Shown: piece after piece, positions 14,446-47,354 of the stretch
How positions within the stretch are numbered: the stretch's first letter is position 1
Layout of the letters: the number at the start of each line of letters is the position of its first letter
Assembly: GCA_965655095.1 (NCBI GenBank)
Contig: OZ296652.1
Location: 56,668,001-56,732,000 of the forward strand
DNA from: Haplodiscus bocki
Taxonomy: Eukaryota
DNA: 64,000 nt
Reading direction: 5' to 3'
Translations under genes and position numbers: made by a program
Notes under the pieces: generated by a model
Databases searched by the model: none
What the model saw: the letters and a program-made list of their open reading frames with translations, nothing else
Told to the model about the DNA's origin: nothing

Positions 14446-14451
14446 ATTTGA

Positions 14452-17400
14452 TATGTTTATCCCACATCCCAAAAACACTTCATGTCAAGATTAACTTAAC
14501 AATGAACTCTTGATGTGCACTGAAGAAAAAGGTTACGACTTGAGAGGAAACAGAAATAAAATAACCCGCTGTCCGGGAAAAATATACAAGCTAGATATAG
14601 GGAAAGTCAACGAAAAGTGTTACTTTTTTGGGACGGAAAACACATAAAAAACTCGAACAAAAAAATCCTAACAAACTTAAAGTTGGAACAATCGAGATCA
14701 GACAAAAAAACTAATCTTTTTGCGAAAAAACTGAAAATTTTTCCGACCTCCCACTTGATTTTCAGAGAAAACTGGCGAACTACAGCTAGATACCAAGAAC
14801 GACCTACGACAAAAGAAGGCAATGCAAAATGCCCAAAGCACTAATTTCAACAAAAAATCCAACAAAAACTGGCACAAAGAGGAAGTCCCTGAGAAATTGA
14901 AACTCAACGGAAAGAAAACTTGGAAAAAGTTGCCCTAATGCCAGACACCAAACTAGAACTGGAATCACAATCGATTTACTACAGAGGGGACATGACCTTA
15001 TTGCAAAAGCTATATCGTTTTGGCAAAGATGTGTACCAGATCGGAATTGAGCGACGCAAAAGATTCGTAAAAATCAATCAAGCCGCAAAAACCGATATGC
15101 GATTCAGACAGGTCATTGAACATAATAGTCGAGGAAAAGAAAACTATACAAAATAACTAATTGACCTTGAACTTCAAAATTGACGGAGAAACAAAAAACT
15201 AAGTTTTGAATCCGGATTCCCTGGTGCAAAAATGCCACATGACCACGAAATTTCAAAGACAATTTAGTTCTACGAAAACTTACAAATATCAAGTGACCAG
15301 AAACTTAATAGACTTTCTCCGATACTGTCAGGCGGAAGCAGTCCTTGAGGGATCAAAATTATGATTTCAACCTATTTATTCGAAGGTCAAGGCATAAAGC
15401 AGTTACCTGGAAAAGACTGATTCCGAGATTTCACTTGGACGACACAAATTATCAACAACATTTCGGGCCTGCAGAAAAAAATATTCTAACAATCGCGGAT
15501 TTGGGCACGGGAATAAATGCCCTTCGAACAATAAGCGGCATCGGAAGAAAAACGACTGAAATCGCGACAACATCCATAAAAAATGAAAAGAAACTGACCA
15601 ACACAGTAACTTTCGCAGCACACAAAGGTGAAAGATGAAGTTGATGAAGACTCTTAGAGGGGAGAAGAAGAAAATGAAGACTGTTCCATATCTCCAGCAG
15701 CAATAACCATGGGATGGATAAATTAGTAAACCTGTTTAGGACTCAAGAATTTACAACAATTGTTGCAAAAAAAATGAGTCAACACATGCGTAACTTGGAG
15801 GAATTACTGAATCTCAGAAGTAAAAAAAATAACAGTGAAAACAGACCATTTCGCTTACTTAAAAAGGACTAAGCGAGAGGTCAATTGAAACAATAAAAGC
15901 AAATATAACCGTAGTTTTACGCAAAAGATGAAGGAACAGGTTGATAAAAACTGTTAGAGAAGTGCAGAAAACAAATGAAGACTGTTCCATATCTACAGCA
16001 GTATTAACCGTGGAGCAGGATAAACCAGTGAATGTTTTTCGGACTCAACAAAAACAAACAACGGTTGCATAAGAATCAGAAAACCTATGCGGAACTGGGA
16101 AGAATTACTGATTCACAAGTCGACAGAAAATATAACAGTAAAAGGAACTGAGATGGTAACCTAAAAGAAGCCTACTCGGACGGTCAATTGAAACAACAGA
16201 ATCAAACAGAACGTAGTTTTACAGAAAAGATGAAAGAGCAGATTGAAAAAAACTCTTGGAGATGTGCAGAAAACAAATGAAGATTGTTCCAAACCTCCAG
16301 TAGTATTCACCGTGGAGAAAGATAAACCCGTAAAACTGTTTTGCACTCAGAAAAGTTAAACAATTGCATAGAAAAGAAAAAAATACATTTGGAACTTAGA
16401 GGAGTTACTGAATCAAAAAATCGACAGTAAAAACTAACATCAAAAACGAACCGTTTTGGTTTTTTGAAAAAGCCTACTCGCACGGACAATTGAAACAAGA
16501 GAAGCAAACAGAAAGGTAGTTTCACGAAACAGATGAAAAAACAGGCTGAAAAAAATTCTTAGGGAAGTGCAGGAAACAAGTCAAGACTGTTCCATATTTC
16601 CGTTAGCTTTGACTTTAACTAAGGAGAGGGATAAAATAGTAAACATGTGTTGGACTCAAGAAAAAAAACAATTGTTTCATAAAAGTGAAACAACACAATT
16701 GGAACTTGAAGGATTTACTGAGCTTCAAAGTTGACGGAAAATATTACAGTAAAAACAAACTGTTTTGGTTACTTAAAATAGGCCTAAGCGCACGGTCAAT
16801 TGGAACCAGAGAAAAAAACGACAACACAGTTCTGCTAACACCTGACGTAACATGAACAGATACACAGTTTGAAACACAGAGCTTTTATTTATCCCACATC
16901 CTCAAAACACTTCATGTCAATTTCAAATTAACAATGAACTCTTGAGGTGCCTTGAAGGAAAAGGTTACGATTCGAGAAGAAACAAAAATAAAACTACTCG
17001 CTGTCAGGAAGAAACAACAACAAGCTAGATATAGGGAAAATGGAAGAAAATCTATCCTTTCCTGGGACGAAAAACATGGTTGCGACTTCAAATAGACGAA
17101 CATGTAAAAAAATTGACAAAAAAATCAAGACAAATTTAAAATTGAAACAAACGAGGTCGGACAAAAAAAACTAATCTTTTTGCGAAAAAACTGAATATTT
17201 TTCCGAACTCTCCCTTGAGTTTCAGAGAAAACTGTCGAACAACTAATAGATACCAAGAAGGACGTACGACAAAAGGACGCATTGCAAAATGCCCAAAGCA
17301 CTAATTTCCAAACAAAAAAATCCAACAAAAACTGGCACAAAGAGGAAGTCCCTGAGAAATTGAAACTCAACGGAAAGAAAACTTGGAAAAAGTTGCCCTA

Positions 17401-20400
17401 ATGCCAGACACCAAACTAGAACTGGAATCACAATCGATTTACTACAGAGGGGACATGACCTTATTGCAAAAGCTATATCGTTTTGGCAAAGATGTGTAAC
17501 AGATCGGAATTGAGCGACGCAAAAGATTCGTAAAAATCAATCAAGCCGCAAAAACCGATATGCGATTCAGACAGGTCATTGAACATAATAGTCGAGGAAA
17601 AGAAAACTATACAAAATAACTAATTGACCTTGAACTTCAAAATTGACGGAGAAACAAAAAACTAAGTTTTGAATCCGGATTCCCTGGTGCAAAAATGCCA
17701 CATGACCACGAAATTTCAAAGACAATTTAGTTCTACGAAAACTTACAAATATCAAGTGACCAGAAACTTAATAGACTTTCTCCGATACTGTCAGGCGGAA
17801 GCAGTCCTTGAGGGATCAAAATTATGATTTCAACCTATTTATTCGAAGGTCAAGGCATAAAGCAGTTACCTGGAAAAGACTGATTCCGAGATTTCACTTG
17901 GACGACACAAATTATCAACAACATTTCGGGCCTGCAGGAAAAAAATGTTCTAACAATCGCGGATTTGGGCACGGGAATAAATGCCCTTGGAACAATAAGC
18001 GGCATCGGAAGAAAAACAATTGAAATCGCGACAACATCCATAAAAAATAAAAAGAAACTGACCAACACAGTAACTTTTGCAGCACACAAAGGTGAAAGAT
18101 GAAGTTGATGAAGACTCTTAGAGGGGAGAAGAAGAAAATGAAGACTGTTCCATATCTCCAGCAGCAATAACCATGGGATGGATAAATTAGTAAACCTGTT
18201 TAGGACTCAAGAATTTAAAACAATTGTTGCAAAAAAAAAATGAGTCAACACATGCGTAACTTGGAGGAATTACTGAATCTCAGAAGTAAAAAAAATAACA
18301 GTGAAAACAGACCATTTCGCTTACTCAAAAAGGACTAAGCGAGAGGTCAATTGAAACAATAAAAGCAAACATAACCGTAGTTTTACGCAAAAGGTGAAGG
18401 AACAGGTTGATAAAAACTGTTAGAGAAGTGCAGAAAACAAATGAAGACTGTTCCATATCTACAGCAGTATTAACCGTGGAGCAGGATAAACCAGTGAATG
18501 TTTTTCGGACTCAACAAAAACAAACAACGGTTGCATAAGAATCAGAAAACCTATGCGGAACTGGGAAGAATTACTGATTCACAAGTCGACAGAAAATATA
18601 ACAGTAAAAGGAACTGAGATGGTAACCTAAAAGAAGCCTACTCGGACGGTCAATTGAAACAACAGAATCAAACAGAACGTAGTTTTACAGAAAAGATGAA
18701 AGAGCAGATTGAAAAAAACTCTTGGAGATGTGCAGAAAACAAATGAAGATTGTTCCAAACCTCCAGTAGTATTCACCGTGGAGAAAGATAAACCCGTAAA
18801 ACTGTTTTGCACTCAGAAAAGTTAAACAATTGCATAGAAAAGAAAAAAATACATTTGGAACTTAGAGGAGTTACTGAATCAAAAAATCGACAGTAAAAAC
18901 TAACATCAAAAACGAACCGTTTTGGTTTTTTGAAAAAGCCTACTCGCACGGACAATTGAAACAAGAGAAGCAAACAGAAAGGTAGTTTCACGAAACAGAT
19001 GAAAAAACAGGCTGAAAAAAATTCTTAGGGAAGTGCAGGAAACAAGTCAAGACTGTTCCATATTTCCGTTAGCTTTGACTTTAACTAAGGAGAGGGATAA
19101 AATAGTAAACATGTGTTGGACTCAAGAAAAAAAACAATTGTTTCATAAAAGTGAAACAACACAATTGGAACTTGAAGGATTTACTGAGCTTCAAAGTTGA
19201 CGGAAAATATTACAGTAAAAACAAACTGTTTTGGTTACTTAAAATAGGCCTAAGCGCACGGTCAATTGGAACCAGAGAAAAAAACGACAACACAGTTCTG
19301 CTAACACCTGACGTAACATGAACAGATACACAGTTTGAAACACAGAGCTTTTATTTATCCCACATCCTCAAAACACTTCATGTCAATTTCAAATTAACAA
19401 TGAACTCTTGAGGTGCCTTGAAGGAAAAGGTTACGATTCGAGAAGAAACAAAAATAAAACTACTCGCTGTCAGGAAGAAACAACAACAAGCTAGATATAG
19501 GGAAAATGGAAGAAAATCTATCCTTTCCTGGGACGAAAAACATGGTTGCGACTTCAAATAGACGAACATGTAAAAAAATTGACAAAAAAATCAAGACAAA
19601 TTTAAAATTGAAACAAACGAGGTCGGACAAAAAAAACTAATCTTTTTGCGAAAAAACTGAATATTTTTCCGAACTCTCCCTTGAGTTTCAGAGAAAACTG
19701 TCGAACAACTAATAGATACCAAGAAGGACGTACGACAAAAGGACGCATTGCAAAATGCCAAAAGCACTAATTTCCAAACAAAAAAATCCAACAAAAACTG
19801 GCACAAAGAGGAAGTCCCTGAGAAATTGAAACTCAACGGAAAGAAAACTTGGAAAAAGTTGCCCTAATGCCAGACACCAAACTAGAACTGGAATCACAAT
19901 CGATTTACTACAGAGGGGACATGACCTTATTGCAAAAGCTATATCGTTTTGGCAAAGATGTGTAACAGATCGGAATTGAGCGACGCAAAAGATTCGTAAA
20001 AATCAATCAAGCCGCAAAAACCGATATGCGATTCAGACAGGTCATTGAACATAATAGTCGAGGAAAAGAAAACTATACAAAATAACTAATTGACCTTGAA
20101 CTTCAAAATTGACGGAGAAACAAAAAACTAAGTTTTGAATCCGGATTCCCTGGTGCAAAAATGCCACATGACCACGAAATTTCATAGACAATTTAGTTCT
20201 ACGAATAATTACAAATATCAAGTGACCAGAAACTTAATAGACTTTCTCCGATACTGTCAGGCGGAAGCAGTCCTTGAGGGATCAAAATTATGATTTCAAC
20301 CTATTTATTCGAAGGTCAAGGCATAAAGCAGTTACCTGGAAAAGACTGATTCCGAGATTTCACTTGGACGACACAAATTATCAACAACATTTCGGGCCTG

Positions 20401-23400
20401 CAGGAAAAAAATGTTCTAACAATCGCGGATTTGGGCACGGGAATAAATGCCCTTGGAACAATAAGCGGCATCGGAAGAAAAACAATTGAAATCGCGACAA
20501 CATCCATAAAAAATAAAAAGAAACTGACCAACACAGTAACTTTTGCAGCACACAAAGGTGAAAGATGAAGTTGATGAAGACTCTTAGAGGGGAGAAGAAG
20601 AAAATGAAGACTGTTCCATATCTCCAGCAGCAATAACCATGGGATGGATAAATTAGTAAACCTGTTTAGGACTCAAGAATTTAAAACAATTGTTGCAAAA
20701 AAAAAATGAGTCAACACATGCGTAACTTGGAGGAATTACTGAATCTCAGAAGTAAAAAAAATAACAGTGAAAACAGACCATTTCGCTTACTCAAAAAGGA
20801 CTAAGCGAGAGGTCAATTGAAACAATAAAAGCAAACATAACCGTAGTTTTACGCAAAAGATGAAGGAACAGGTTGATAAAAACTGTTAGAGAAGTGCAGA
20901 AAACAAATGAAGACTGTTCCATATCTACAGCAGTATTAACCGTGGAGCAGGATAAACCAGTGAATGTTTTTCGGACTCAACAAAAACAAACAACGGTTGC
21001 ATAAGAATCAGAAAACCTATGCGGAACTGGGAAGAATTACTGATTCACAAGTCGACAGAAAATATAACAGTAAAAGGAACTGAGATGGTAACCTAAAAGA
21101 AGCCTACTCGGACGGTCAATTGAAACAACAGAATCAAACAGAACGTAGTTTTACAGAAAAGATGAAAGAGCAGATTGAAAAAAACTCTTGGAGATGTGCA
21201 GAAAACAAATGAAGATTGTTCCAAACCTCCAGTAGTATTCACCGTGGAGAAAGATAAACCCGTAAAACTGTTTTGCACTCAGAAAAGTTAAACAATTGCA
21301 TAGAAAAGAAAAAAATACATTTGGAACTTAGAGGAGTTACTGAATCAAAAAATCGACAGTAAAAACTAACATCAAAAACGAACCGTTTTGGTTTTTTGAA
21401 AAAGCCTACTCGCACGGACAATTGAAACAAGAGAAGCAAACAGAAAGTTAGTTTCACGAAACAGATGAAAAAACAGGCTGAAAAAAATTCTTAGGGAAGT
21501 GCAGAAAACAAGTCAAGACTGTTCCATATTTCCGTTAGCTTTGACTTTAACTAAGGAGATGGATAAAATAGTAAACATGTGTTGGACTCAAGAAAAAAAA
21601 ACAACTGTTTCATAAAAGTGAAACAACACAATTGGAACTTGAAGGATTTACTGAGCTTCAAAGTTGATGGAAAATATTACAGTAAAAACAAACTGTTTTG
21701 GTTACTTAAAATAGGCCTAAGCGCACGGTCAATTGGAACCAGAGAAAAAAACGACAACACAGTTCTGCTAACACCTGACGTAACATGAACAGATACACAG
21801 TTTGAAACACAGAGCTTTTATTTATCCCACATCCTCAAAACACTTCATGTCAATTTCAAATTAACAATGAACTCTTGAGGTGCCTTGAAGGAAAATGTTA
21901 CGATTCGAGAAGAAACAAAAATAAAACTACTCGCTGTCAGGAAGAAATTACAACAAGCTAGATATAGGGAAAATGGAAGAAAATCTATCCTTTCCTGGGA
22001 CGAAAAACATGGTTGCGACTTCAAATAGACGAACATGTAAAAAAAATTGACAAAAAAATCAAGACAAATTTAAAATTGAAACAATCGAGGTCGGACAAAA
22101 AAAACTAATCTTTTTGCGAAAAAACTGAATATTTTCCCGAACTCTCCCTTGAGTTTCAGAGAAAACAGTCGAACAACTAATAGATACCAAGAAGGACGTA
22201 CGACAAAAGGACGCATTGCAAAATGCCAAAAGCACTAATTTCCAAACAAAAAAATCCAACAAAAACTGGCACAAAGAGGAAGTCCCTGAGAAATTGAAAC
22301 TCAACGGAAAGAAAACTTGGAAAAAGTTGCCCTAATGCCAGACACCAAACTAGAACTGGAATCACAATCGATTTACTACAGAGGGGACATGACCTTATTG
22401 CAAAAGCTATATCGTTTTGGCAAAGATGTGTACCAGATCGGAATTGAGCGACGCAAAAGATTCGTAAAAATCAATCAAGCCGCAAAAACCGATATGCGAT
22501 TCAGACAGGTCATTGAACATAATAGTCGAGGAAAAGAAAACTATACAAAATAACTAATTGACCTTGAACTTCAAAATTGACGGAGAAACAAAAAACTAAG
22601 TTTTGAATCCGGATTCCCTGGTGCAAAAATGCCACATGACCACGAAATTTCAAAGACAATTTAGTTCTACGAAAACTTACAAATATCAAGTGACCAGAAA
22701 CTTAATAGACTTTCTCCGATACTGTCAGGCGGAAGCAGTCCTTGAGGGATCAAAATTATGATTTCAACCTATTTATTCGAAGGTCAAGGCATAAAGCAGT
22801 TACCTGGAAAAGACTGATTCCGAGATTTCACTTGGACGACACAAATTATCAACAACATTTCGGGCCTGCAGGAAAAAAATGTTCTAACAATCGCGGATTT
22901 GGGCACGGGAATAAATGCCCTTGGAACAATAAGCGGCATCGGAAGAAAAACAATTGAAATCGCGACAACATCCATAAAAAATAAAAAGAAACTGACCAAC
23001 ACAGTAACTTTTGCAGCACACAAAGGTGAAAGATGAAGTTGATGAAGACTCTTAGAGGGGAGAAGAAGAAAATGAAGACTGTTCCATATCTCCAGCAGCA
23101 ATAACCATGGGATGGATAAATTAGTAAACCTGTTTAGGACTCAAGAATTTAAAACAATTGTTGCAAAAAAAAAATGAGTCAACACATGCGTAACTTGGAG
23201 GAATTACTGAATCTCAGAAGTAAAAAAAATAACAGTGAAAACAGACCATTTCGCTTACTCAAAAAGGACTAAGCGAGAGGTCAATTGAAACAATAAAAGC
23301 AAACATAACCGTAGTTTTACGCAAAAGATGAAGGAACAGGTTGATAAAAACTGTTAGAGAAGTGCAGAAAACAAATGAAGATTGTTCCAAACCTCCAGTA

Positions 23401-26400
23401 GTATTCACCGTGGAGAAAGATAAACCCGTAAAACTGTTTTGCACTCAGAAAAGTTAAACAATTGCATAGAAAAGAAAAAAATACATTTGGAACTTAGAGG
23501 AGTTACTGAATCAAAAAATCGACAGTAAAAACTAACATCAAAAACGAACCGTTTTGGTTTTTTGAAAAAGCCTACTCGCACGGACAATTGAAACAAGAGA
23601 AGCAAACAGAAAGTTAGTTTCACGAAACAGATGAAAAAACAGGCTGAAAAAAATTCTTAGGGAAGTGCAGAAAACAAGTCAAGACTGTTCCATATTTCCG
23701 TTAGCTTTGACTTTAACTAAGGAGATGGATAAAATAGTAAACATGTGTTGGACTCAAGAAAAAAAAACAACTGTTTCATAAAAGTGAAACAACACAATTG
23801 GAACTTGAAGGATTTACTGAGCTTCAAAGTTCATGGAAAATATTACAGTAAAACAAACTGTTTTGGTTACTCAAAATAGGCCTAAGCGCACGGTCAATTG
23901 GAACCAGAGAAAAAAACGACAACACAGTTCTGCTAACACCTGACGTAACATGAACAGATACACAGTTTGAAACACAGAGCTTTTATTTATCCCACATCCT
24001 CAAAACACTTCATGTCAATTTCAAATTAACAATGAACTCTTGAGGTGCCTTGAAGGAAAAGGTTACGATTCGAGAAGAAACAAAAATAAAACTACTCGCT
24101 GTCAGGAAGAAATTACAACAAGCTAGATATAGGGAAAATGGAAGAAAATCTATCCTTTCCTGGGACGAAAAACATGGTTGCGACTTCAAATAGACGAACA
24201 TGTAAAAAAAAATTGACAAAAAAATCAAGACAAATTTAAAATTGAAACAATCGAGGTCAGACAAAAAAAACTAATCTTTTTGCGAAAAAACTGAATATTT
24301 TTCCGAACTCTCCCTTGAGTTTCAGAGAAAACTGTCGAACAACTAATAGATACCAAGAAGGACGTACGACAAAAGGACGCATTGCAAAATGCCAAAAGCA
24401 CTAATTTCCAAACAAAAAAATCCAACAAAAACTGGCACAAAGAGGAAGTCCCTGAGAAATTGAAACTCAACGGAAAGAAAACTTGGAAAAAGTTGCCCTA
24501 ATGCCAGACACCAAACTAGAACTGGAATCACAATCGATTTACTACAGAGGGGACATGACCTTATTGCAAAAGCTATATCGTTTTGGCAAAGATGTGTACC
24601 AGATCGGAATTGAGCGACGCAAAAGATTCGTAAAAATCAATCAACCCGCAAAAACCGATATGCGATTCAGACAGGTCATTGAACATAATAGTCGAGGAAA
24701 AGAAAACTATACAAAATAACTAATTGACCTTGAACTTCAAAATTGACGGAGAAACAAAAAACTAAGTTTTGAATCCGGATTCCCTGGTGCAAAAATGCCA
24801 CATGACCACGAAATTTCAAAGACAATTTAGTTCTACGAAAACTTACAAATATCAAGTGACCAGAAACCTAATAGACTTTCTCGGATACTGTCAGGCGGAA
24901 GCAGTCCTTGAGGGATCAAAATTATGATTTCAACCTATTTATTCGAAGGTCAAGGCATAAAGCAGTTACCTGGAAAAGACGGATTCCGAGATTTCACTTG
25001 GACGACACAAATTATCAACAACATTTCGGGCCTGCAGGAAAAAAATATTCTAACAATCGCGGATTTGGGCACGGGAATAAATGCCCTTCGAAAAATAAGC
25101 GGCATCGGAAGAAAAACAATTGAAATCGCGACAACATCCTTAAAAAATAAAAAGAAACTGACCAACACAGTAACTTTCGCAGCACACAAAGGTGAAAGAT
25201 GAAGTTGATGAAGACTCTTAGAGGGGAGAAGAAGAAAATGAAGACTGTTCCATATCTCCAGCAGCAATAACCATGGGATGGATAAATTAGTAAACCTGTT
25301 TAGGACTCAAGAATTTAAAACAATTGTTGCAAAAAAAATGAGTCAACACATGCGTAACTTGGAGGAATTACTGAATCTCAGAAGTAAAAAAAATAACAGT
25401 GAAAACAGACCATTTCTTTTACTTAAAAAGGACTAAGCGAGAGGTCAATTGAAACAATAAAAGCAAACATAACCGTAGTTTTACGCAAAAGATGAAGGAA
25501 CAGGTTGATAAAAACTGTTAGAGAAGTGCAGAAAACAAATGAAGACTGTTCCAAACCTCCAGTAGTATTCACCGTGGAGAAAGATAAACCCGTAAAACTG
25601 TTTTGCACTCAGAAAAGTTAAACAATTGCATAGAAAAGAAAAAAATACATTTGGAACTTAGAGGAGTTACTGAATCAAAAAATCGACAGTAAAAACTAAC
25701 ATCAAAAACGAACCGTTTTGGTTTTTTGAAAAAGCCTACTCGCACGGACAAATGAAACAAGAGAAGCAAACAGAAAAGTACTTTCAAGAAACAAGACAGA
25801 ATAGGCTGAAAAAAATTCTTACGGAAGTGCAGAAAACAAATCAAGACTGTTCCATATTTCCGTTAGCTTTAACCGTGGAGGTGGATAAAATAGTAAACAT
25901 GTGTTGGACTCAAGAAAATAAAACAATTGTTTCATAAAAGTGAAACAACACAATTGGAACTTGAAGGATTTACTGAGCTTCAAAGTTGACGGAAAAGATA
26001 ACAGTGAAAACAGACCGTTTTGATTACTTAAAATAGGCCTACACGCACGGTCAATTGAAACAGTAGAAGCAAACAAAACCATAGTTTTAAGCAAAAAATG
26101 AAGGAACAGGTTGATAAAAACTGTTAGAGAAGTGCAGAAAACGAATGAAGACTGTTCCATATCTACAGCTGTATTAACCGTGGAGCAGGATAAACCAGTG
26201 AAAGTCTTTCGGACTCAACAAAAATAAACAACTGTTGCATAAGAATCAGAAAACCTATGCGGAACTGGGAAGAATTACGGATTCACAAAGTCGACAGAAA
26301 CACTAACAGTAAAAACGAACTGAGGTGGTAACCTAAGAGAAGCCTACTTGGACGGTCAAGTGAAACAACAGAACCAAACAAAATTGTAATTTCACAGAAA

Positions 26401-35400: not shown

Positions 35401-38400
35401 GTTTCCGAGATTTCACTTGGACGACACAAATTATCAACAACATTTCGGGCCAGTAGAAAAAAAGTATTATAACAACCGCAGATTTGGGCGTAGAATTAAA
35501 ACCCATCGAACAATATGAAGCATCGGAAAATTTCAACTGAACTCGGGACAACATCCAAAAAAAATTTAAAAAAACCGACCAACACCGTAACTTTCGCAGT
35601 ACACAAAGGTAAAAGAGGAAGTTGATGAAGACTCTTAGAGAAGACAAGAAGAAATTGAAGACTGTTCCGTATCTCCAGCAGCAATAACCATGGAGATGGA
35701 TAAAATAGTAAACCTGTTTTGGACTCAAGAATTTAAAACAAATGTTGCAAAAAAAAATCAACACATGCATAACTTGGAGGAGTTACTGAATCTCAGGATT
35801 ACAAAAAATAACAGCAAAAACAGACCAGTTTGCTCACTTAAAAAGGCCTAAGCGAGAAGTCAATTGGAACCAGAGAAAAAAACGACAACATAGTTCTCCT
35901 GACACCTAACGTAACATGAACAGATACAGAGTTTGAAACAGAGAGCTCATATTTATCCGACATCCTCAGAATATTTCATGCCAAGATTAACTTAACACTG
36001 AACTCTTGGTGTGCCTTGAAGAAAAAGATTACGACCTGAAAAGAAACAAAATTAAAATTACTCGCTGTCAGGAAAAAAAACAACACGCTAGATATAGAGA
36101 AAGTTGAAAAAAATCTAGCCTTTCCTGGGACGAAAAACATTGTTGCGACTTGAAATAAACGAACATTTAATACAACCGAACAAAAAAATCAAAACAAATA
36201 CAAAATTTAAATAACCGAAGTCTGCCAAAGAAAAAATTTTCTCTCCGAAACAACTGAGACTTTTTCTGAAATCCCCTTTGACTTTCAGAGAAAATTGGCG
36301 AACAACTATTAGATACCAAGAAAGATCTACGTCAAAAGGAGACAACGTAAAAAGCCAAAAGCACCATTTTCAGCAAAAAATCCAAGAAAAACTGGCACAA
36401 AGAAAATCAGTGAGAAATTGAAACTCAACCGGAAAAAAACGTGGAAACATTTGCCGATAATTCCAGACACAAAACTAGAACTGGAATCCCAATGGCTTTA
36501 CTACAGAAAAGACAAGTCTCTATTGCAAAATTGACACCGCTTTTGCAAAAGTGTGTATGAGATCGTCTGTCATCGAAGCAAAAGATTCATGAAAAGTCAA
36601 TGAACCTGCAAAAACCGATAAGCGATTCAAACAGGTCAATGACTATAATAATCGAAAAGAGTAAAATTATACAAAATAACTAATTGGCCTTGAACGTCAA
36701 AATTGACCGAGAAATGAAAAAATATATTTTTGAATACCGATTCCTTCATGTAAAAGTGCCACATGACCACAAAATTTCAAAAACAATATAGTTTCGCCGA
36801 CAACCGATAAATATCAAAGGTGACCAGAAATTTAAAAAGACTGCCACAGATAGTGTCCGGCGGAAGCAGCGATTGAGGGATTAATATTCAGATTTCAAGC
36901 CTTTCTTCGAAAGGCAAGGCATAAAGCAGTTACCCGGAAAGGACTGTTTCCGAGATTTCACTTGGACGACACAAACTATCAACAACATTGCGGGCCAGTA
37001 GAAAAAGAGTATTATAACAACCGCAGATTCGGGCGTAGAATTAAAAACCCATCGAACAATATGAAGCATCGGAAAAATTCAACTGAACTCGGGACAACAT
37101 CCAAAAAAAATTTAAAAAAACTGACCAACACCGTAACTTTCGCAGTACACAAAGGTAAAAGAAGAAGTTGATGAAGATCTTAGAGAAGAGAAGAAGAAAA
37201 TGAAGACTGTTCCGTATCTCCAGCAGCAATAACCATGGAGATGGAGAAAATAGTAAACATGTTTTGGACTCAAGAATTTAGAACAAATGTTGCAAATAAA
37301 TGAGTCAACACAGGCGTAACTTGGAGGAATTACTGAATCTCAGGATTACAAAAATAACAGCAAAAACAGACCATTTTGCTTACTTGAAAACGCCTCAGCG
37401 AGACGTCAATTGGAACCAGAGAAAAAAACGACAACATAGTTCTAACACCTAACGTAACATGAACAGATACAGAGTTTGAAACAGAGCTCATATTTATCCG
37501 ACATTCTCAGAATATTTCATGTCAAGATTAACTTAACACTGAACTCTTGATGTGCCTTGAAGAAAAAGATTACGACCTGAGAGGAAACAAAATTAAGATT
37601 ACTCGCTGTCAGGAAAAAAACAACAAGCTAGATATAGAGGAACTTGAAAAAAATCTAGCCTTTCCTGTGACGAAGAACATTGTTGCGACTTGAAATAAAC
37701 GAGCATTTAATACAACCGAACAAAAAAATCAAAACAAATACAAAATTTAAACAACCGAAGTCTGCCAAAGAAATAGTTTTTTTTCTCCGAAACAACTGAG
37801 ACTTTTTCTGAAATCCCCTTTGACTTTCAGAGAAAATTGGCGAACAACTATTAAATACCAAGAAAGATCTACGTCAAAAGGACGCAACGTAAAATGGCAA
37901 AAGCACCATTTTCAGCAAAAAATCCAACAAAAACTGGCACAAACAGCAAATCACTGAGAAATTGAAACTCAACCGGAAAAAAACGTGGAAACATTTGCCG
38001 ATAATTCCAGATACCAAAAAAGAACCGGAATCCCAATCGCTTTACTACAGAAAGGACATTTCTTGATTGCAAAATTGACACCGCTTTTGCAAAAGTGTGT
38101 ATGAGATCGTCTGTCATCGAAGCAAGAGATTCATGAAAAGTCAATGAACCCGCAAAAACCGATAAGCGATTCAAACAGGTCAATGACTATCAAACTCGAA
38201 AAGAGTAAAATTATACAAAATAACTAATTGGCCTTGAAGGTCAAAATTGACCGAGAAATGAAAAAATATATTTTTGAATAAAGCATCCTTCGAGTAAAAA
38301 TGCCACATGACCACAAAATTTCAAAAGCAATATAGTTTCGCCGACAACCGATAAATATCAAAGGTGAGCAGAAATTTAAAAAGACTGCCGCGGATAGTGT

Positions 38401-41400
38401 CCGGCGGAAGCAGCGATTGAGGGATTAAAATTAAGATTTGAAGTCTTTTTTCGAAAGGCAAGGCATAAAGCAGTTACCCGGAAAGGACTGTTTCCGAGAT
38501 TTCACTTGGACGACACAAATTATCAACAACATTTCGGGCCAGTAGAAAAAAAGTATTATAACAACCGCAGATTTGGGCGTAGAATTAAAACCCATCGAAC
38601 AATATGAAGCATCGGAAAATTTCAACTGAACTCGGGACAACATCCAAAAAAAATTTAAAAAAACCGACCAACACCGTAACTTTCGCAGTACACAAAGGTA
38701 AAAGAGGAAGTTGATGAAGACTCTTAGAGAAGACAAGAAGAAATTGAAGACTGTTCCGTATCTCCAGCAGCAATAACCATGGAGATGGATAAAATAGTAA
38801 ACCTGTTTTGGACTCAAGAATTTAAAACAAATGTTGCAAAAAAAAATCAACACATGCATAACTTGGAGGAGTTACTGAATCTCAGGATTACAAAAAATAA
38901 CAGCAAAAACAGACCAGTTTGCTCACTTAAAAAGGCCTAAGCGAGAAGTCAATTGGAACCAGAGAAAAAAACGACAACATAGTTCTCCTGACACCTAACG
39001 TAACATGAACAGATACAGAGTTTGAAACAGAGAGCTCATATTTATCCGACATCCTCAGAATATTTCATGCCAAGATTAACTTAACACTGAACTCTTGGTG
39101 TGCCTTGAAGAAAAAGATTACGACTGAAAAGAAACAAAATTAAAATTACTCGCTGTCAGGAAAAAAAACAACACGCTAGATATAGAGAAAGTTGAAAAAA
39201 ATCTAGCCTTTCCTGGGACGAAAAACATTGTTGCGACTTGAAATAAACGAACATTTAATACAACCGAACAAAAAAATCAAAACAAATACAAAATTTAAAT
39301 AACCGAAGTCTGCCAAAGAAAAAATTTTCTCTCCGAAACAACTGAGACTTTTTCTGAAATCCCCTTTGACTTTCAGAGAAAATTGGCGAACAACTATTAG
39401 ATACCAAGAAAGATCTACGTCAAAAGGAGACAACGTAAAAAGCCAAAAGCACCATTTTCAGCAAAAAATCCAAGAAAAACTGGCACAAAGAAAATCACTG
39501 AGAAATTGAAACTCAACCGGAAAAAAACGTGGAAACATTTGCCGATAATTCCAGACACAAAACTAGAACTGGAATCCCAATGGCTTTACTACAGAAAAGA
39601 CAATTCTCTATTGCAAAATTGACACCGCTTTTGCAAAAGTGTGTATGAGATCGTCTGTCATCGAAGCAAAAGATTCATGAAAAGTCAATGAAGCTGCAAA
39701 AACCGATAAGCGATTCAAACAGGTCAATGACTATAATAATCGAAAAGAGTAAAATTATACAAAATAACTAATTGGCCTTGAACGTCAAAATTGACCGAGA
39801 AATGAAAAAATATATTTTTGAATACCGATTCCTTCATGTAAAAATGCCACATGACCACAAAATTTCAAAAACAATATAGTTTCGCCGACAACCGATAAAT
39901 ATCAAAGGTGACCAGAAATTTAAAAAGACTGCCACAGATAGTGTCCGGCGGAAGCAGCGATTGAGGGATTAATATTCAGATTTCAAGCCTTTCTTCGAAA
40001 GGCAAGGCATAAAGCAGTTACCCGGAAAGGACTGTTTCCGAGATTTCACTTGGACGACACAAACTATCAACAACATTGCGGGCCAGTAGAAAAAGAGTAT
40101 TATAACAACCGCAGATTTGGGCGTAGAATTAAAAACCCATCGAACAATATGAAGCATCGGAAAAATTCAACTGAACTCGGGACAACATCCAAAAAAAATT
40201 TAAAAAAACTGACCAACACCGTAACTTTCGCAGTACACAAAGGTAAAAGAAGAAGTTGATGAAGATCTTAGAGAAGAGAAGAAGAAAATGAAGACTGTTC
40301 CGTATCTCCAGCAGCAATAACCATGGAGATGGAGAAAATAGTAAACATGTTTTGGACTCAAGAATTTAGAACAAATGTTGCAAATAAATGAGTCAACACA
40401 GGCGTAACTTGGAGGAATTACTGAATCTCAGGATTACAAAAATAACAGCAAAAACAGACCATTTTGCTTACTTGAAAACGCCTCAGCGAGACGTCAATTG
40501 GAACCAGAGAAAAAAACGACAACATAGTTCTAACACCTAACGTAACATGAACAGATACAGAGTTTGAAACAGAGCTCATATTTATCCGACATCCTCAGAA
40601 TATTTCATGTCAAGATTAACTTAACACTGAACTCTTGATGTGCCTTGAAGAAAAAGATTACGATCTGAGAGGAAACAAAATTAAGATTACTCGCTGTCAG
40701 GAAAAAAAACAACAAGCTAGATATAGGGGAACTTGAAAAAAAATCTAGCCTTTCCTGTGACGAAGAACATTGTTGCGACTTGAAATAAACGAGCATTTAA
40801 TACAACCGAACAAAAAAATCAAAACAAATACAAAAGTTAAACAACCGAAGTCTGCCAAAGAAATAGTTTTTTTTCTCCGAAACAACTGAGACTTTTTCTG
40901 AAATCCCCTTTGACTTTCAGAGAAAATTGGCGAACAACTATTAAATACCAAGAAAGATCTACGTCAAAAGGACGCAACGTAAAATGCCAAAAGCACCATT
41001 TTCAGCAAAAAATCCAAGAAAAACTGGCACAAAGAGCAAATCACTGAGAAATTGAAAATCAACCGGAAAAAAACGTGGAAACATTTGCCGATAATTCCAG
41101 ATACCAAACTAGAACTGGAATCACAATCGCTTTACCACAGAAAGGATATTTCTTTTTTTGCAAAATTGACACCGCTTTTGCAAAAGTTTGTATGAGATCG
41201 TCTGTCATCGAAGCAAAAGATTCATGAAAAGTCAATGAACCCGCAAAAACCGACAATCGATTCAAACAGGTCGATGACTATAATACTCGAAAAGAGGAAA
41301 ACTATACAAATTAACTAATTGGCCTTGAACGTCAAAATTGACCGAGAAATGAAAAACTATATTTTTGAATAACGATTCCTTCGAGTAAAAATGCCACATG

Positions 41401-44400
41401 ACCACAAAATTTCAAAAGCAATATAGTTTCGCCGAAAACCGATAAATATCAAAGGTGACCAGAAATTTAAAAAGACTGCCGCAGATAGTGTCCGACGGAA
41501 GCAGCGATTGAGGGATTAATATTAAGATTTCAAGCCTTTCTTCGAAAGGCAAGGCATAAAGCAGTTACCCGGAAAGGACTGTTTCCGAGATTTCACTTGG
41601 ACGACACAAACTATCAACAACATTGCGGGCCAGTAGAAAAAGAGTATTATAACAACCGCAGATTTGGGCGTAGAATTAAAAACCCATCGAACAATATGAA
41701 GCATCGGAAAAATTCAACTGAACTCGGGACAACATCCAAAAAAAATTTAAAAAAACTGACCAACACCGTAACTTTCGCAGTACACAAAGGTAAAAGAAGA
41801 ATTTGATGAAGATCTTAGAGAAGAGAAGAAGAAAATGAAGACTGTTCCGTATCTCCAGCAGCAATAACCATGGAGATGGAGAAAATAGTAAACATGTTTT
41901 GGACTCAAGAATTTAAAACAAATGTTGCAAATAAATGAGTCAACACAGGCGTAACTTGGAGGAATTACTGAATCTCAGGATTACAAAAATAACAGCAAAA
42001 ACAGACCATTTTGCTTACTTGAAAACGCCTCAGCGAGACGTCAATTGGAACCAGAGAAAAAAACGACAACATAGTTCTAACACCTAACGTAACATGAACA
42101 GATACAGAGTTTGAAACAGAGCTCATATTTATCCGACATTCTCAGAATATTTCATGTCAAGATTAACTTAACACTGAACTCTTGATGTGCCTTGAAGAAA
42201 AAGATTACGACCTGAGAGGAAACAAAATTAAGATTACTCGCTGTCAGGAAAAAAAACAACAAGCTAGATATAGAGGAACTTGAAAAAAAATCTAGCCTTT
42301 CCTGTGACGAAGAACATTGTTGCGACTTGAAATAAACGAGCATTTAATACAACCGAACAAAAAAATCAAAACAAATACAAAAGTTAAACAACCGAAGTCT
42401 GCCAAAGAAATAGTTTTTTTTCTCCGAAACAACTGAGACTTTTTCTGAAATCCCCTTTGACTTTCAGAGAAAATTGGCGAACAACTATTAAATACCAAGA
42501 AAGATCTACGTCAAAAGGACGCAACGTAAAATGCCAAAAGCACCATTTTCAGCAAAAAATCCAAGAAAAACTGGCACAAAGAGCAAATCACTGAGAAATT
42601 GAAAATCAACCGGAAAAAAACGTGGAAACATTTGCCGATAATTCCAGATACCAAACTAGAACTGGAATCACAATCGCTTTACCACAGAAAGGATATTTCT
42701 TTTTTTGCAAAATTGACACCGCTTTTGCAAAAGTTTGTATGAGATCGTCTGTCATCGAAGCAAAAGATTCATGAAAAGTCAATGAACCCGCAAAAACCGA
42801 CAATCGATTCAAACAGGTCGATGACTATAATACTCGAAAAGAGGAAAACTATACAAATTAACTAATTGGCCTTGAACGTCAAAATTGACCGAGAAATGAA
42901 AAACTATATTTTTGAATAACGATTCCTTCGAGTAAAAATGCCACATGACCACAAAATTTCAAAAGCAATATAGTTTCGCCGACAACCGATAAATATCAAA
43001 GGTGACCAGAAATTTAAAAAGACTGCCGCAGATAGTGTCCGACGGAAGCAGCGATTGAGGGATTAATATTAAGATTTCAAGCCTTTCTTCGAAAGGCAAG
43101 GCAAAAAGCAGTTACCCGGAAAGGACTGTTTCCGAGATTTCACTTGGACGACACAAACTATCAACAACATTTCGGGCCAGTAGAAAAATATTATAACAAC
43201 CGCAGATTTGGGCGTAGAATTAAAACCCATCGAACAATATGAAGCATGGGAAAATTTCAACTGAACTCGGGACAACATCCAAAAAAAATTTAAAAAAACT
43301 GACCAACACCGTAACTTTCGCAGTACACAAATGTGAAAGAAGAAGTTGATGAAGACTCTTAGAGAAGAAGAAAATGAAGACTGTTCCGTATCTCCAGCAG
43401 CAATAACCATGGAGATGGAGAAAATAGTAAACCTGTTTTGGACTCAAGAATTTAAAACAAATGTTGCAAAAAAATGAGTCAACTTATGCGTAACTTGGAG
43501 GATTTACTGAATCTCAGGATTACAAAAAACAACAGCAAAAACAGACCATTTTGCTTACTTAAAAAGGCCTAAGCGAGAGGTCAATTGAAACAATAAAAGC
43601 AAACATAACCGTAGTTTTACGCAAAAAATGAACGCACAGGTTGATAAAAACTGTTGGAGAAGTGCAGAAAATAAATGAAGACTGCTGCATATCTACAGCA
43701 GTATTAACCGTGGAGCAGGATAAACCAGTGAAAGTCTTTCGGACTCAACGAAGTTAAACAACTGCTGCATAAGAAAGCCTATGCGGAACTGGGAAGAATT
43801 ACTGATTCACAAAGTCGACAGAAAATAAAACAGTAAAAACGAACTGAGATGGTTACCTAAAAGAAGCCTACGCGGACGGTCAATTGAAACAACAGAATCA
43901 AACAGAAACGTAGTTTCACAGAAAAGATGAAAGAGCAGGTTGAAAAAAACTCTTGGAGATGTGCAGAAAACAAATGAAGATTGTTCCAAATCTCCAGTTG
44001 TATTAACTGTGGAAAAGGATAAACATTTAAACTGTTTTGGTTTCAGAAAAGTTAAACAATTGTTGCACAAAAACGAAACAGTACATGTGGAACTTGGGGG
44101 AGTTACTGAACGACTAAATCAACAGAAAAAACAGCAAAAATGAACCGTTTTGGTTACTTAAAAGAGGCCTATTGGCACAGTCAATTGAAACAGGAGAAGC
44201 AAACAAAAACGTAGTTTCACAAAATAGATGAAAGAACATGTTGAAAAAACCTCTTTGAGAAGTGCAAAAAACAACTGAAGACTGTTACAAATCTCCAGTA
44301 GTATTAACTGTGGAGAAGGATTTAATTTGTGAAACTGTTTTGGACTCAAGAAAGCTTAACAATTGTGGCATAAGAATCAGACAAAAATATGCGGAACTTG

Positions 44401-44925
44401 GAAGAATTACTGAATCACAAAGTCAACAAAAAGATAACAGTAAAAGTGAACCGTTTTGGTTACTTAGAGGCCTACGCGCACGGTCAAATAAAACTTGAAA
44501 GAAAACAGAAACATAGTTCTGCTAATATCTAACGTAACCTGAACAGATACAGAGTCTGAAACAGGGAGCTTATGCTTATCCGACATTCTCATGACACTTC
44601 CGTCAAGATTAACTTAACAATGAACTCATGATGTGCCTTGAGGACAAAGGTTACGACTTGAGAAGAAACACAAGTAAAATTGCCCGCTGTCCGGAAAAAA
44701 ATTACAACAAGCTAGATATAAGGAAAATGAAAGAAAATCGTTACTCTTTTGCGACGAAAAACATGGCGGCGACATCAAATAGACGAACTCGTAATAAAAC
44801 GGAGCAGGGAAATCAAAACAAAAATAAAATTGAAACAACGGAAGTCGATCAAGGAAAAAAATTTTTCAAATAAAAAACAACTGAATATTTTTCTAAAATT
44901 AACCTTATCTCTCAGAGAAAGGTAG
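14452..44925 (+). repeat. ~30.5-kb tandem macrosatellite derived from Gypsy gag zinc knuckle-protease-RT; 14 full units plus a partial
   Basis: Anchor (TCATGTCAA-like) at 14480, 16912, 19378, 21845, 24010, 27077, 31336, 32878, 34429, 35976, 37517, 39065, 40605, 42152 and ~44599. Unit lengths 2432, 2466, 2467, 2165, 3067, 4259, then seven of 1540-1551, then ~2447. Identical ORF translations recur at these periods. Confidence 0.97.
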
Positions 44926-45039: not shown

Positions 45040-45530
45040 CGCTGGAAACCGAATAAACATCGTAACAAATGATGCAAGCCCAACCGGACTCGGAATAGCA
45101 TTTTGGCAAAAAACGAAACGAATTTTTAGCAAGACCGATTGCAATTGCATTGTATTTGAATGAAAGCGCAAAGAATTTTTTGGTCGGTGGACTCGCTTTG
45201 TTAGCAGTTGCTTGTCGGTTGAGAAAATTCTATTGCTCTTTTTTGGAAAAAGGAACCACCAAGCATAAGAACCACCAGCATAAGAACCACCAAGCATAAG
45301 AACCACCAAGCATAAGAACCACCAAGCATAAGAACCACCAAGCATAAAAACCGCCAAGCATAAGAACCACCAAGCATAAGAACCACCAAGCATAAGAACC
45401 ATTATCGCAACGAAACCCTTCATTTCGACTATCAAAATGGTTGGGCAAGCTAGCACATTTTGACACCTCATTGAAGCAGACAGCTGGATATAGTCTAAAA
45501 GTTGCAGGTTTTTCAAGCACACACCCAGTG
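45040..45530 (+). pseudogene. Gypsy RNase H remnant
   Basis: NIVTNDASPTGLGIAFWQK..RPIAIALYLNESAKNF..LLAVACRLRKF..NHQA*EPL..RLSKWLGKLAHFDTSLKQTAG matches the TDAS..GLG / ELLAV / TDH / RL.RW motif series. Confidence 0.85.
45253..45401 (+). repeat. 16-bp minisatellite (GAACCACCAAGCATAA) x ~9.4
   Basis: Copies start at 45253, 45269, 45284, 45300, 45316, 45332, 45348, 45364 and 45380, with a partial copy at 45396. Confidence 0.97.
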
Positions 45531-46329: not shown

Positions 46330-47290
46330 TTCCAAGGTCGATTGAACGCTAATCTACAAAACTTCGGTTGATCCGAAACTGCTACAGGTGAAGTTCTTTT
46401 TAATTAACGGCGAGTTCCTGAAGTATTCATTTTCTATTTCAAACAGTTATCAGAACTATTCAGTTTGTTATTTGTTTATCGTTGAATTATAGTGCTCCAA
46501 GAAGCAAAGAGACAAATAATCGACGTATTTTTATTTAGTTCAGTAACAAGGGATCTGCAAACAAACTTGTCAAAAATTCAGTACTGTGGTTATCTACCAT
46601 TTACAAAAACATTGAGAACAGATGCAATTCTTGCACCAACTCCTGTGAGAATCAGAAATATCAATTACCATCGACCGAACAGAACAATTTGCACGTGTGG
46701 ATCGCGGACAAAGAATTCAATAAACTTTTCTGGTTTTCAGGTAACTTACTCAATGAAAAACTTCCCGGCGAACTGTACATTTTTTAGCAATCAAATGATT
46801 TAGGAAATGACCAGTGATACGACTCTTTAAGTCCATTGATGGACAGGAAGTGATACTTTTTTCCAGAGCCATGTGAATATGTACGAAGTCATGGAGAAAG
46901 AACAATCAGACCGAGGCATTCTTTTCCTTTCCACAAAAATGGAGTTCTGTTAGACGAGAAATTGGAAAGAAGTATAGTCTTACTGTACTACATACTGGAA
47001 TAGAGGCAGTGGGAAATGTGACACAATGTTTGAACAATGTGATAAATGCAAACCTCCAAAACCACATCAGTTTTACCATAAGCGTTAATTGCGCGCTGAG
47101 AGCAATGAAACTCAAAGTGCTCACTAGATTTCGAAATACACGTCTTTATATTCACTGCGGGAGAGAATCACGGACCGAATCATTTAATATAAATTAGAAT
47201 GGAATTAACTTTTCATCGGAATTGACAAAGTTATATTTGTCAGAGGGACCGAAGTGGATCGCCTATTATGTAGGCCGGAACTCCAAAAGA
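46330..47290 (+). pseudogene. Gypsy integrase remnant
   Basis: KQLSELFSLLFVYR*IIVLQEAKRQIIDV (pre-HHCC region); YEVMEKEQSDRGILFLS (G.P..I.SD.G..F.S); LHTGIEAVGNVTQCLNNVINANL..VNCALRAMK..HCGRESRTE (G.VER...LK helix and GR.PR motifs; ORF 47009-47197). Confidence 0.75.
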
Positions 47291-47313
47291 GAAGTCAGCG
47301 GCGATAACGTCAC

Positions 47314-47314
47314 G

Positions 47315-47354
<40 letters not shown>

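What the first reader, a model, noticed from the sequence alone, without database searches (positions are those of the whole stretch)
15640..44500. Nested ~300-bp RT-derived subrepeat with variable copy number (1 to 10 per unit): a satellite inside a satellite
Seen: the GAAGACTGTTCCATAT..TTAACCGTGGAG..GGACTCAAG..GGAACTTG..GGTCAATTGAAAC module occurs 4,4,4,3,6,10,1,1,1,1,1,1,1,4 times in successive units (42 copies). This accounts for unit lengths as ~1.55 kb + n x ~300 bp. Adjacent subrepeats are clearly diverged, whereas corresponding ones in neighbouring units are near-identical, which is a higher-order-repeat pattern. The + strand is extremely A-tract rich. Inference: two successive amplification layers; ~300 bp could suit nucleosome phasing, as in many satellites (speculative).
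Basis: partly seen in the sequence, partly recalled or inferred. Interest (0 to 1): 0.7.

Follow-up and report, generated by a model that had tools for sequence, protein, structure and literature searches.

The report
Nested tandem array from dead retrotransposon
A single decayed Ty3/gypsy-like jumping gene had a 1.5-kb internal piece copied head to tail 14 times in place. Inside that piece, a 301-bp stretch from the start of its reverse-transcriptase gene was copied 1 to 10 times. It is a very clean but ordinary example of how mobile elements give rise to satellite-like repeats.

Summary
There are 42 monomers of about 301 bp in 14 macro-units, counted 4,4,4,3,6,10,1x7,4. They fall into four position classes (A-B-C-D) that are 68-76% alike between classes and 89-100% alike within a class.

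The monomer is derived from reverse transcriptase. It is a decayed copy of the protease-RT linker plus the first part of RT, up to and including motif A, of a Ty3/gypsy-like LTR retroelement.

The macro-unit is a 1.55-kb segment of that element: pre-protease region, protease, RT N-terminus and RT core. The last unit runs without a break into the founder's RNase H and integrase.

Copy-number variants are explained by unequal exchange between the A and D monomers near position 210. D-head/A-tail hybrids occur in the 6- and 10-copy units. A-head/D-tail hybrids are the single-copy units.

The array is unique to this locus in a 1.5-Gb animal-type genome. It has no reading frame longer than 100 aa on the sense strand, and no RNA data are available. 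Its A-richness equals that of the element family's sense strand, and there is no 10-bp A-tract periodicity, so the nucleosome-phasing idea has no support.

Earlier notes of this scan report several other arrays in this genome made from internal retroelement pieces. Verdict: a real new member of a known kind, of modest interest.

The parts
14456..44925 (+). Whole tandem array: a left-truncated partial unit, then 14 macro-units, ending in the founder's RT core
   Evidence: Self-matches of the spacer and monomers lie only at this locus. Edges were defined by alignment and blastn.
14456..31275 (+). Type I block, units U1-U6. Spacers S01-S06 are 93-100% alike. Monomer strings are ABCD, ABCD, ABCD, ACD, ACXBCD and ABCXBCXBCD.
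31276..43375 (+). Type II block. Spacers S07-S14 are 90-100% alike and about 81% like type I. Units U7-U13 each carry one A-head/D-tail hybrid monomer. U9-U10 / U11-U12 is a 3.09-kb duplicated pair.
18140..19331 (+). Representative monomer block A-B-C-D of unit 2 (A 18140-18442, B 18443-18744, C 18745-19047, D 19048-19331). True repeat homology ends near D position 246.
28307..31275 (+). Ten-monomer block of unit 6. It contains two 100% identical X-B-C trimers (29215-30112 and 30113-31010).
   Evidence: Short-read contigs from two samples match parts of it exactly.
25842..26146 (+). X monomer of unit 5. Its head (1-210) is 93% like D and its tail is 89-94% like A.
16866..18139 (+). Representative spacer (S02). 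Positions ~1-345 are an RT-core remnant. The macro-unit junction lies at ~365-400. Positions ~400-790 are the region upstream of protease. Positions ~790-1040 are a protease remnant (window 17656-17908). The rest is the PR-RT linker.
   Evidence: tblastn to natural ORFs of related elements is colinear but weak (E 1e-5 to 1e-3).
43376..44522 (+). Edge unit U14 monomers A, B, C', D'. Divergence from type I rises towards the array end (K2P 0.08, 0.06, 0.20, 0.32). D' (44277-44522) gives the best protein hit to RT (E 9e-9).
44523..44925 (+). Founder RT-core copy (S15p). It is 76-78% like every other copy and continues colinearly into RNase H.
45062..45233 (+). RNase H remnant of the founder element (TNDASPTGLG.. 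motif)
   Evidence: tblastn with L004 ORF, which Pfam scores as RT_RNaseH at 7e-21
46539..47299 (+). Integrase remnant: zinc-binding part 46539-46784 and core 46811-47299
   Evidence: tblastn E 2e-11 and 4e-16 with ORFs that carry Pfam Integrase_H2C2 and rve
47616..47987 (+). Last stretch colinear with the 3' part of related elements. No LTR was identified.

Best explanation
This is the wreck of one Ty3/gypsy-like LTR retroelement copy, sense strand = + strand, that was amplified in place in several steps.

Step 1 (inferred). A ~301-bp segment was duplicated in tandem to four copies (A-B-C-D). The segment covers the end of the protease-RT linker and the RT N-terminus through motif A. The duplication probably happened at a short imperfect direct repeat that flanks the segment.

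Step 2. A ~1.55-kb segment was duplicated head to tail and expanded. It runs from upstream of protease to ~400 bp into the RT core and already carried the monomers. The founder's RT core, RNase H and integrase remain attached at the right edge.

Step 3. Out-of-register homologous exchange between A and D monomers near position 210 produced two forms. Collapsed single-copy units carry an A-head/D-tail monomer. Expanded units carry D-head/A-tail 'X' monomers.

Step 4. Recent unequal exchanges copied whole units (U1-U5 are 99-100% alike), unit pairs (U9-U12) and an X-B-C trimer.

Nothing indicates a function. The most likely state is a neutrally evolving, probably copy-number-variable, single-locus macrosatellite-like array. 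The structure and the origin are shown; the order of steps and the neutrality are inferred.
For: Counts and classes.

Uniqueness: all 15 spacer matches in the 1.5-Gb genome lie at this locus. Monomers have only 68-82% short matches elsewhere.

Those matches lie in a ~5.5-kb dispersed family with at least 1684 candidate loci. Its natural ORFs carry Pfam RT_RNaseH (7e-21), Integrase_H2C2, rve, weak RVT_1 and weak Asp_protease_2, in the order PR-RT-RH-IN.

Protein-level hits of these ORFs fall on the monomers, on RNase H at 45062-45233 and on integrase at 46539-47299.

Colinearity: D' start to array end is 658 bp, against 696 bp in L004. The unit spans ~1550 bp in related elements, against 1545 bp for a single-copy unit.

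The 301-bp junction is mapped at monomer position ~246-250, which gives integral copy numbers. An 18/21-nt imperfect repeat lies at both parental flanks.

Mosaic monomers: X is 93% like D in the head and 89-94% like A in the tail. The U9-13 singles are 90-91% like A in the head and 94% like D at positions 211-246.

Distance ladder (K2P): classes 0.30-0.43; founder edge 0.27-0.29; type I against type II 0.18-0.21; within type I 0.003-0.06.

No + strand ORF of 100 aa or more lies in the array. The - strand ORFs have no Pfam family. There is no Rfam hit.
Against: - Pfam finds nothing significant on the window's own stop-free pieces, so domain identity rests on tblastn to related elements.
- The protease and RT-core matches in the spacer are weak (E 1e-5 to 1e-3 in a small database).
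- No LTRs, target-site duplication or 5' part of the founder were found.
- The left end is a truncated unit abutting unrelated unique sequence, so the original context is incomplete.
- The order '301 bp first, macro-unit second' rests on similar distances (0.30-0.43 against 0.27-0.29) and on D' grouping with B and C in the tree. It is probable, not proven.
- Both reciprocal A x D products sit in one array. A single sister-chromatid exchange does not predict this.
- Absence of function was not tested, because no RNA run was available.
Confidence: 0.78

Rival explanations
1. Circle-mediated amplification. Intrachromatid recombination between the D monomer of one unit and the A monomer of the next fused two units, creating an X monomer. 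It also released a 1.545-kb circle made of a spacer plus one A/D hybrid monomer. That circle was amplified by rolling-circle replication and reinserted by homology, giving the block of single-copy units U7-U13 next to the X-bearing units U5-U6.
For: Both reciprocal hybrid types exist in the same array, with breakpoints within ~20-30 bp of each other. The single-copy block directly follows the X-bearing units. The single-copy unit has exactly the size and content of the predicted circle.
Against: Type II spacers differ from type I by K2P ~0.2, and U7/U8 have a different mosaic. The events are therefore old and not obviously simultaneous. Two independent unequal exchanges, or exchange between homologues, explain the same data. 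No circle-junction evidence is available.
Confidence: 0.15
2. The array is a functional locus. It could be a uni-strand piRNA or small-RNA source against the abundant gypsy-like family, a long non-coding RNA gene, or a chromatin or centromere-associated repeat whose ~300-bp period positions nucleosomes.
For: All 42 monomers and all units share one orientation and derive from the most conserved part of an abundant retroelement family. The locus lies about mid-way along what is known of a contig of at least 114 Mb.
Against: No RNA run holds it, though such data are scarce. It is single-locus and only 30 kb. Monomers are only ~70% like genomic elements, which is poor for small-RNA targeting. There is no 10-bp A-tract periodicity, and the composition is inherited from the parent. 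Units decay freely, with stops everywhere and no sign of conservation.
Confidence: 0.07
3. The 301-bp repeats arose during reverse transcription, by template switching, in a mobile non-autonomous variant of the element. They were then inherited on insertion, and only the macro-unit layer arose in place.
For: Monomer classes are as diverged from each other as from dispersed elements. Internal tandem repeats are known in LTR elements, for example the Ogre UTR repeats (PMC7004042).
Against: No other copy with two or more adjacent monomers, or with this spacer, was found in the genome. Each of the six dispersed copies compared (L001-L006) has one RT N-terminus.
Confidence: 0.06
4. Assembly artefact: the near-identical units were produced or miscounted by the assembler.
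For: U1-U3 are 99-100% identical, the X-B-C trimers are identical, and U9/U11 and U10/U12 are identical. Such blocks are prone to miscounting.
Against: Most units are distinguishable, with spacer types 81% alike, different monomer strings and an edge gradient. Unit-6-specific variants occur exactly in short-read contigs from two samples. The structure as a whole cannot be an artefact.
Confidence: 0.03

Closest known systems
Retrotransposon-derived satellite or tandem repeats. Examples: Ogre-derived satellites of Lathyrus and Pisum (PMC7004042), and ORF-derived cases listed in the review PMC9659126 (chicken HinfI/CR1 ORF2, Phodopus PROsat/L1 ORF2, rye E3900/gag).
   Same: The repeat unit is a piece of a retroelement amplified head to tail. 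The parent sequence is still recognisable. Expansion is by recombination.
   Different: Here the source is coding sequence (protease and RT N-terminus), not the UTR or LTR parts that the review says predominate. The array is a single 30-kb locus, not a multi-locus high-copy satellite. The founder element is still attached at the edge.
Higher-order repeat organisation of alpha-satellite-type arrays
   Same: Diverged adjacent monomers (68-76%) contrast with near-identical corresponding monomers in neighbouring higher-order units. Hybrid monomers arise from out-of-register exchange. Divergence rises toward the array edge.
   Different: The higher-order unit also contains 1.25 kb of non-repeated sequence. 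There are only 42 monomers. No centromere association has been shown.
Macrosatellites / kb-unit VNTRs with internal subrepeats, and rDNA intergenic-spacer subrepeats
   Same: A kb-scale unit is repeated in tandem at one locus, with an internal subrepeat block whose copy number varies between units.
   Different: No gene or rRNA lies in the unit (Rfam found none). The unit is a pseudogenised retroelement fragment.
Other arrays noted by this scan in the same genome (s1-362052 Copia IN-RT 1.21 kb x ~32; s1-382648 LINE piece 1.67 kb x ~25 with founder at the edge; s1-359303 LINE-derived 13x array in an intron)
   Same: Each is an in-place amplification of an internal retroelement piece at a single locus. 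In one case the founder is preserved at the array edge.
   Different: None of those short notes mentions a nested second repeat layer with variable copy number or reciprocal hybrid monomers. I did not re-examine them.

Membership tests
Higher-order-repeat tandem array | Head-to-tail monomers of constant length | tested here: met
   42 copies with period 297-307 bp
Higher-order-repeat tandem array | Monomers cluster by position in the higher-order unit rather than by neighbourhood | tested here: met
   Identity matrix and tree. The class labels need 7 changes against a shuffled mean of 27.4.
Satellite DNA in the strict sense | High copy number in long arrays, usually at several loci, forming a sizeable genome fraction | tested here: not met
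   The spacer occurs only at this locus. Monomers have only weak matches elsewhere, in dispersed elements.
Transposable-element-derived tandem repeat | Significant homology of the unit to a dispersed element | tested here: met
   blastn 68-75% over 140-190 bp. tblastn with natural ORFs reaches E 9e-9 on monomers.
Transposable-element-derived tandem repeat | Colinearity of the unit and the array edge with the parent element | tested here: met
   The edge copy continues into RNase H and integrase in the parent's order and spacing.
Ty3/gypsy LTR retrotransposon (the founder) | Domain order PR-RT-RH-IN with gypsy-type Pfam domains | tested here: met
   Shown on related natural ORFs: RT_RNaseH, Integrase_H2C2, rve, Asp_protease_2. 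Transferred to the window by colinear tblastn. The window's own pieces give no Pfam hit.
Ty3/gypsy LTR retrotransposon (the founder) | Two LTRs and a target-site duplication | tested here: not met
   There is no similarity between the left flank and anything right of the array. The 5' part of the founder is missing or unrecognisable.
Ty3/gypsy LTR retrotransposon (the founder) | Phylogenetic placement of RT or IN within Metaviridae rather than BEL/Pao | not tested
   The large protein searches were not spent on this. The classification rests on the Pfam domain set only.
Tandem LTR-internal-LTR-internal arrays | Units separated by a shared LTR | tested here: not met
   The unit junction joins the RT core to the pre-protease region. 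No LTR-like block or sharp LTR end is seen at the array edges.
Macrosatellite (polymorphic kb-unit VNTR) | Copy number varies between individuals | not testable with these tools
   Only short-read contigs from one study were available.

The most novel reading that the evidence does not exclude
This genome may have a systematic tendency to amplify internal retroelement fragments in place; the scan has noted at least four other such arrays. This locus may record the mechanism: excision of a 1.545-kb circle by D x A recombination, rolling-circle amplification, and homologous reinsertion. That would explain why both reciprocal hybrid monomer types sit side by side in one array.
Probability: 0.12. 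Interest if true: 0.6.

Novelty: new member of a known kind. Interest (0 to 1): 0.33.

Why it matters
It is an unusually legible record of how a satellite-like repeat is born from a mobile element. The founder copy, both duplication junctions, four or more nested layers and both reciprocal products of an out-of-register exchange can all still be read in 30 kb. That makes it a good teaching or model locus for unequal exchange, and for edge effects in tandem arrays. Together with the other arrays noted in this genome, it could serve as a test case for whether some genomes amplify retroelement fragments unusually often. It does not reveal a new kind of element or a function.

Tried and rejected
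- LTR-internal-LTR tandem model. I tested it because the array carries about 0.3 of an extra unit. I rejected it because the extra part is RT core running into RNase H, and no LTR pair exists.
- Pfam on eight - strand ORFs of 105-169 aa gave nothing. These ORFs are explained by the A-poor composition of the - strand.
- Pfam on 20 + strand stop-free pieces of spacers and the right flank gave nothing significant.
- Pfam on ten flank ORFs found no host gene.
- Rfam and tRNA scans of the window found nothing.
- The genome search with the right-flank element part found no close relative, only short conserved motifs. The first attempt was swamped by a young ~195-bp repeat.
- The AA-dinucleotide power spectrum shows no 10-11-bp signal.
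- CpG observed/expected is about 0.9-1.0 in the array and the flanks, so it gives no methylation-decay clock.
- Read laying returned only short contigs. It confirms unit-6 variants but cannot check copy number, and no RNA was available.
Full report
**1. Observation**

TRF reports blocks of period 301-302 bp between 15.9 and 44.5 kb. An nhmmer search with one monomer (window 28307-28607) finds exactly 42 copies, all on the + strand, with E from 2e-22 to 2e-83. They are grouped 4,4,4,3,6,10,1,1,1,1,1,1,1,4 (coordinates).

Between the groups lie spacers of 1274-1304 bp. The period is 1544-1552 bp for one-monomer units and 2464-2468 bp for four-monomer units.

**2. Higher-order pattern**

The pairwise identity matrix shows four classes by position: A, B, C and D. 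They are 68-76% alike between classes and 89-100% alike within a class across units.

A maximum-likelihood tree groups monomers by class:
- B has SH-aLRT 99 and C has 88.
- A with the U9-13 singles has 99.
- D with X and the U7-8 singles has 98.
- The labels need 7 changes on the tree, the minimum being 6. The shuffled mean is 27.4, and 0 of 200 shuffles are as low.

The monomer strings are:
- U1-3: ABCD
- U4: ACD
- U5: ACXBCD
- U6: ABCXBCXBCD
- U7-13: one monomer each
- U14: ABC'D'

The two X-B-C trimers of U6 (29215-30112 and 30113-31010) are identical.

Spacers fall into two types. Type I is S01-S06 (93-100% alike). Type II is S07-S14 (90-100% alike). The two types are about 81% alike. U9/U11 and U10/U12 pair up (98-100%), which is a 3.09-kb two-unit duplication. 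There are therefore at least four nested layers, not two.

**3. Where it sits**

The window is C5:56668001-56732000 of a 1.5-Gb, 6626-contig genome.

All 15 genomic matches of the spacer lie inside this array. The monomers have only short matches of 68-82% identity elsewhere. This is one locus, not a dispersed or multi-locus satellite.

Short-read contigs from four DNA runs of one study (two samples) hold the sequence, including exact matches to unit-6-specific variants. No RNA run holds it.

**4. What the monomer is**

The weak matches elsewhere lie in a dispersed ~5.5-kb family with at least 1684 candidate loci.

Natural ORFs of its copies carry these Pfam domains:
- a retropepsin-like Asp_protease_2 (weak)
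- RT_RNaseH (7e-21), Integrase_H2C2 and rve
- a weak RVT_1

One 256-aa ORF (L013) reads straight from protease through the linker into the RT start...IQLKPG...EKIQ..ED.F..VVITVK.DKSLK.ALDS.K.N..CIKMRP..PNMEELLN....PLWISKIDLEY. This domain set fits Ty3/gypsy. I did not place it phylogenetically.

The monomers align to exactly this stretch, at DNA level (68-75% over 140-190 bp) and at protein level. 'RT-derived' is therefore correct. More precisely, the monomer is the end of the protease-RT linker plus the RT N-terminus through motif A.

**5. What the macro-unit is**

Protein-level comparison with the related elements is colinear, though weak in the spacer (E 1e-5 to 1e-3 in a small database). 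It maps the spacer as follows:
- positions ~135-345: RT core just downstream of the monomer region
- positions ~400-790: the region upstream of protease
- positions ~790-1040: protease (for example window 17656-17908)

In element order, the unit is [pre-protease, protease, linker, RT N-terminus x n, ~400 bp of RT core]. This spans ~1550 bp in the relatives and 1545 bp in a one-monomer unit.

The right edge is decisive. The last monomer D' (44277-44522) and the last partial spacer (44523-44925) continue without a break into the rest of the element:
- an RNase H remnant (45062-45233)
- integrase zinc-binding and core remnants (46539-46784 and 46811-47299, E 2e-11 and 4e-16)
- the element's tail, to about 47990

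Spacing matches the relatives: 658 bp here against 696 bp in L004. The homology of the edge copy to the other spacers stops at 44920-44929. The founder element is thus still attached.

Its RNase H-integrase part has no close relative in the genome. The lineage is represented only here.

The left end is different. The array starts at spacer position 23, inside the RT-core part. It follows 545 bp of unique A-rich sequence (13911-14455) and an unrelated old dispersed repeat (12953-13910). I found no LTR pair or target-site duplication. The founder's 5' part is lost or unrecognisable.

**6. Junction of the 301-bp layer**

I aligned the internal monomer junctions with 'D into spacer' and 'spacer end into A'. 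This places the duplication junction at monomer position ~246-250. The 52 bp before A belong to the repeat, and D ends at ~246.

Every unit then holds a whole number of copies (4, 3, 6, 10 or 1). One-copy units have exactly the unduplicated length.

The two parental flanks share an imperfect 18/21-nt direct repeat at the junction in type I copies. It is weaker in the edge copy. This suggests a short-homology-mediated first duplication. The sequence is A-rich and the evidence is only suggestive.

**7. How copy numbers changed**

At sites where A and D differ, the hybrid monomers are sharp mosaics:
- X monomers are 92-93% like D over positions 1-210. Over 211-246 they are 86-89% like A, and over 250-300 they are 80-94% like A.
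- The singles of U9-13 are 90-91% like A (95% like U14's A) over positions 1-210. Over 211-246 they are 94% like D.
- U7 and U8 switch earlier.

These are the two reciprocal products of out-of-register exchange between A and D near position 210. One product collapses four copies to one. The other gives A-B-C-X-B-C-D.

- U5 (A-C-X-B-C-D) fits an exchange between an A-C-D unit and an A-B-C-D unit.
- U4 lacks B.
- U6 gained a second X-B-C recently.

Both reciprocal products sit in one array. A single sister-chromatid exchange does not predict this. It needs either two events, or exchange between homologues, or excision of a 1.545-kb circle followed by amplification and reinsertion. I keep the circle route as a minority rival.

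**8. Relative timing (K2P)**

| Comparison | K2P |
|---|---|
| Between monomer classes | 0.30-0.43 |
| Founder RT core against all other copies | 0.27-0.29 |
| Type I against type II spacers | 0.18-0.21 |
| S01 against S02 | 0.06 |
| S02 against S03 (within U2-U5) | 0.003 |

U14 shows an edge gradient against type I: A 0.08, B 0.06, C' 0.20, D' 0.32. D' groups with B and C in the tree rather than outside A-D.

The 301-bp layer is therefore probably at least as old as the macro-unit layer. The distances are close, and this order is an inference.

**9. Function**

- No + strand ORF of 100 aa or more lies in the array. The + frames are full of stops.
- The - strand ORFs of 105-154 aa have no Pfam family. 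They are expected on an A-poor strand.
- Rfam and tRNA scans are empty.
- Flank ORFs show no host gene.
- The array's 42.4% A equals the sense-strand composition of six related elements (39.5-43.1%).
- AA dinucleotides show no excess power at 9.5-11.5 bp.

The A-tract richness is inherited, and nothing supports curvature or nucleosome phasing. I judge the array to be a neutrally evolving by-product of recombination. This remains untested because no RNA or chromatin data were reachable.

**10. Comparison with what is known**

Tandem repeats born from retroelements are well documented (PMC7004042). A review notes that non-coding parts (LTR, TIR, UTR) predominate as sources, but it lists ORF-derived cases (PMC9659126).

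This locus is a coding-region-derived case with an unusually complete record. Earlier notes of this scan report several other single-locus arrays built from internal retroelement pieces in the same genome. I did not re-test them. They make this a recurrent phenomenon here rather than a singular one.

**11. Verdict**

It is wrong or unsupported on 'satellite' status and on nucleosome phasing. This is a new member of a known kind, of modest interest.

Noticed in passing
window 47321-47521: A young ~195-bp dispersed repeat with a (TGT)n head is inserted in the integrase remnant of the founder. Hundreds of copies genome-wide are 98-100% identical, so the family is probably still active or was active very recently (SINE- or MITE-like). 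No tRNA-like part was detected by ARAGORN.
   Followed up: partly
G000 C2:147388606-147435685: Four copies of that ~195-bp repeat are spaced about 15.6 kb apart. This points to another large-unit tandem duplication.
   Followed up: no
window 12953-13910: An old dispersed repeat of ~960 bp (at least 658 candidate loci, 64-75% identity) lies directly left of the unique sequence that abuts the array.
   Followed up: partly
window 13911-14455: 545 bp of unique A-rich (41% A) sequence lies between that repeat and the truncated left end of the array. It has no match to the unit or to the related elements, apart from one weak 68-bp hit to the 5' region of L006. It might be the founder's decayed leader/gag.
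   Followed up: partly
window 45253-45401: A 16-bp microsatellite (GAACCACCAAGCATAA x 9.4, 95% matches) lies inside the RNase H remnant.
   Followed up: no
window 9091-9373: A 143-bp unit is repeated twice (78% matches) in the T-rich left flank.
   Followed up: no
window, all parts: CpG observed/expected is 0.83-1.04 in the array and the flanks. There is no sign of CpG decay from germline methylation, even in this old repeat.
   Followed up: partly
L004:3473-3838 (-) = G000 C8 near 91.03 Mb: An ORF ends in what looks like an HP1-type chromo-shadow domain (..[39 protein letters not shown]). It sits next to a gypsy-like element copy. This is recognition by eye only.
   Followed up: no
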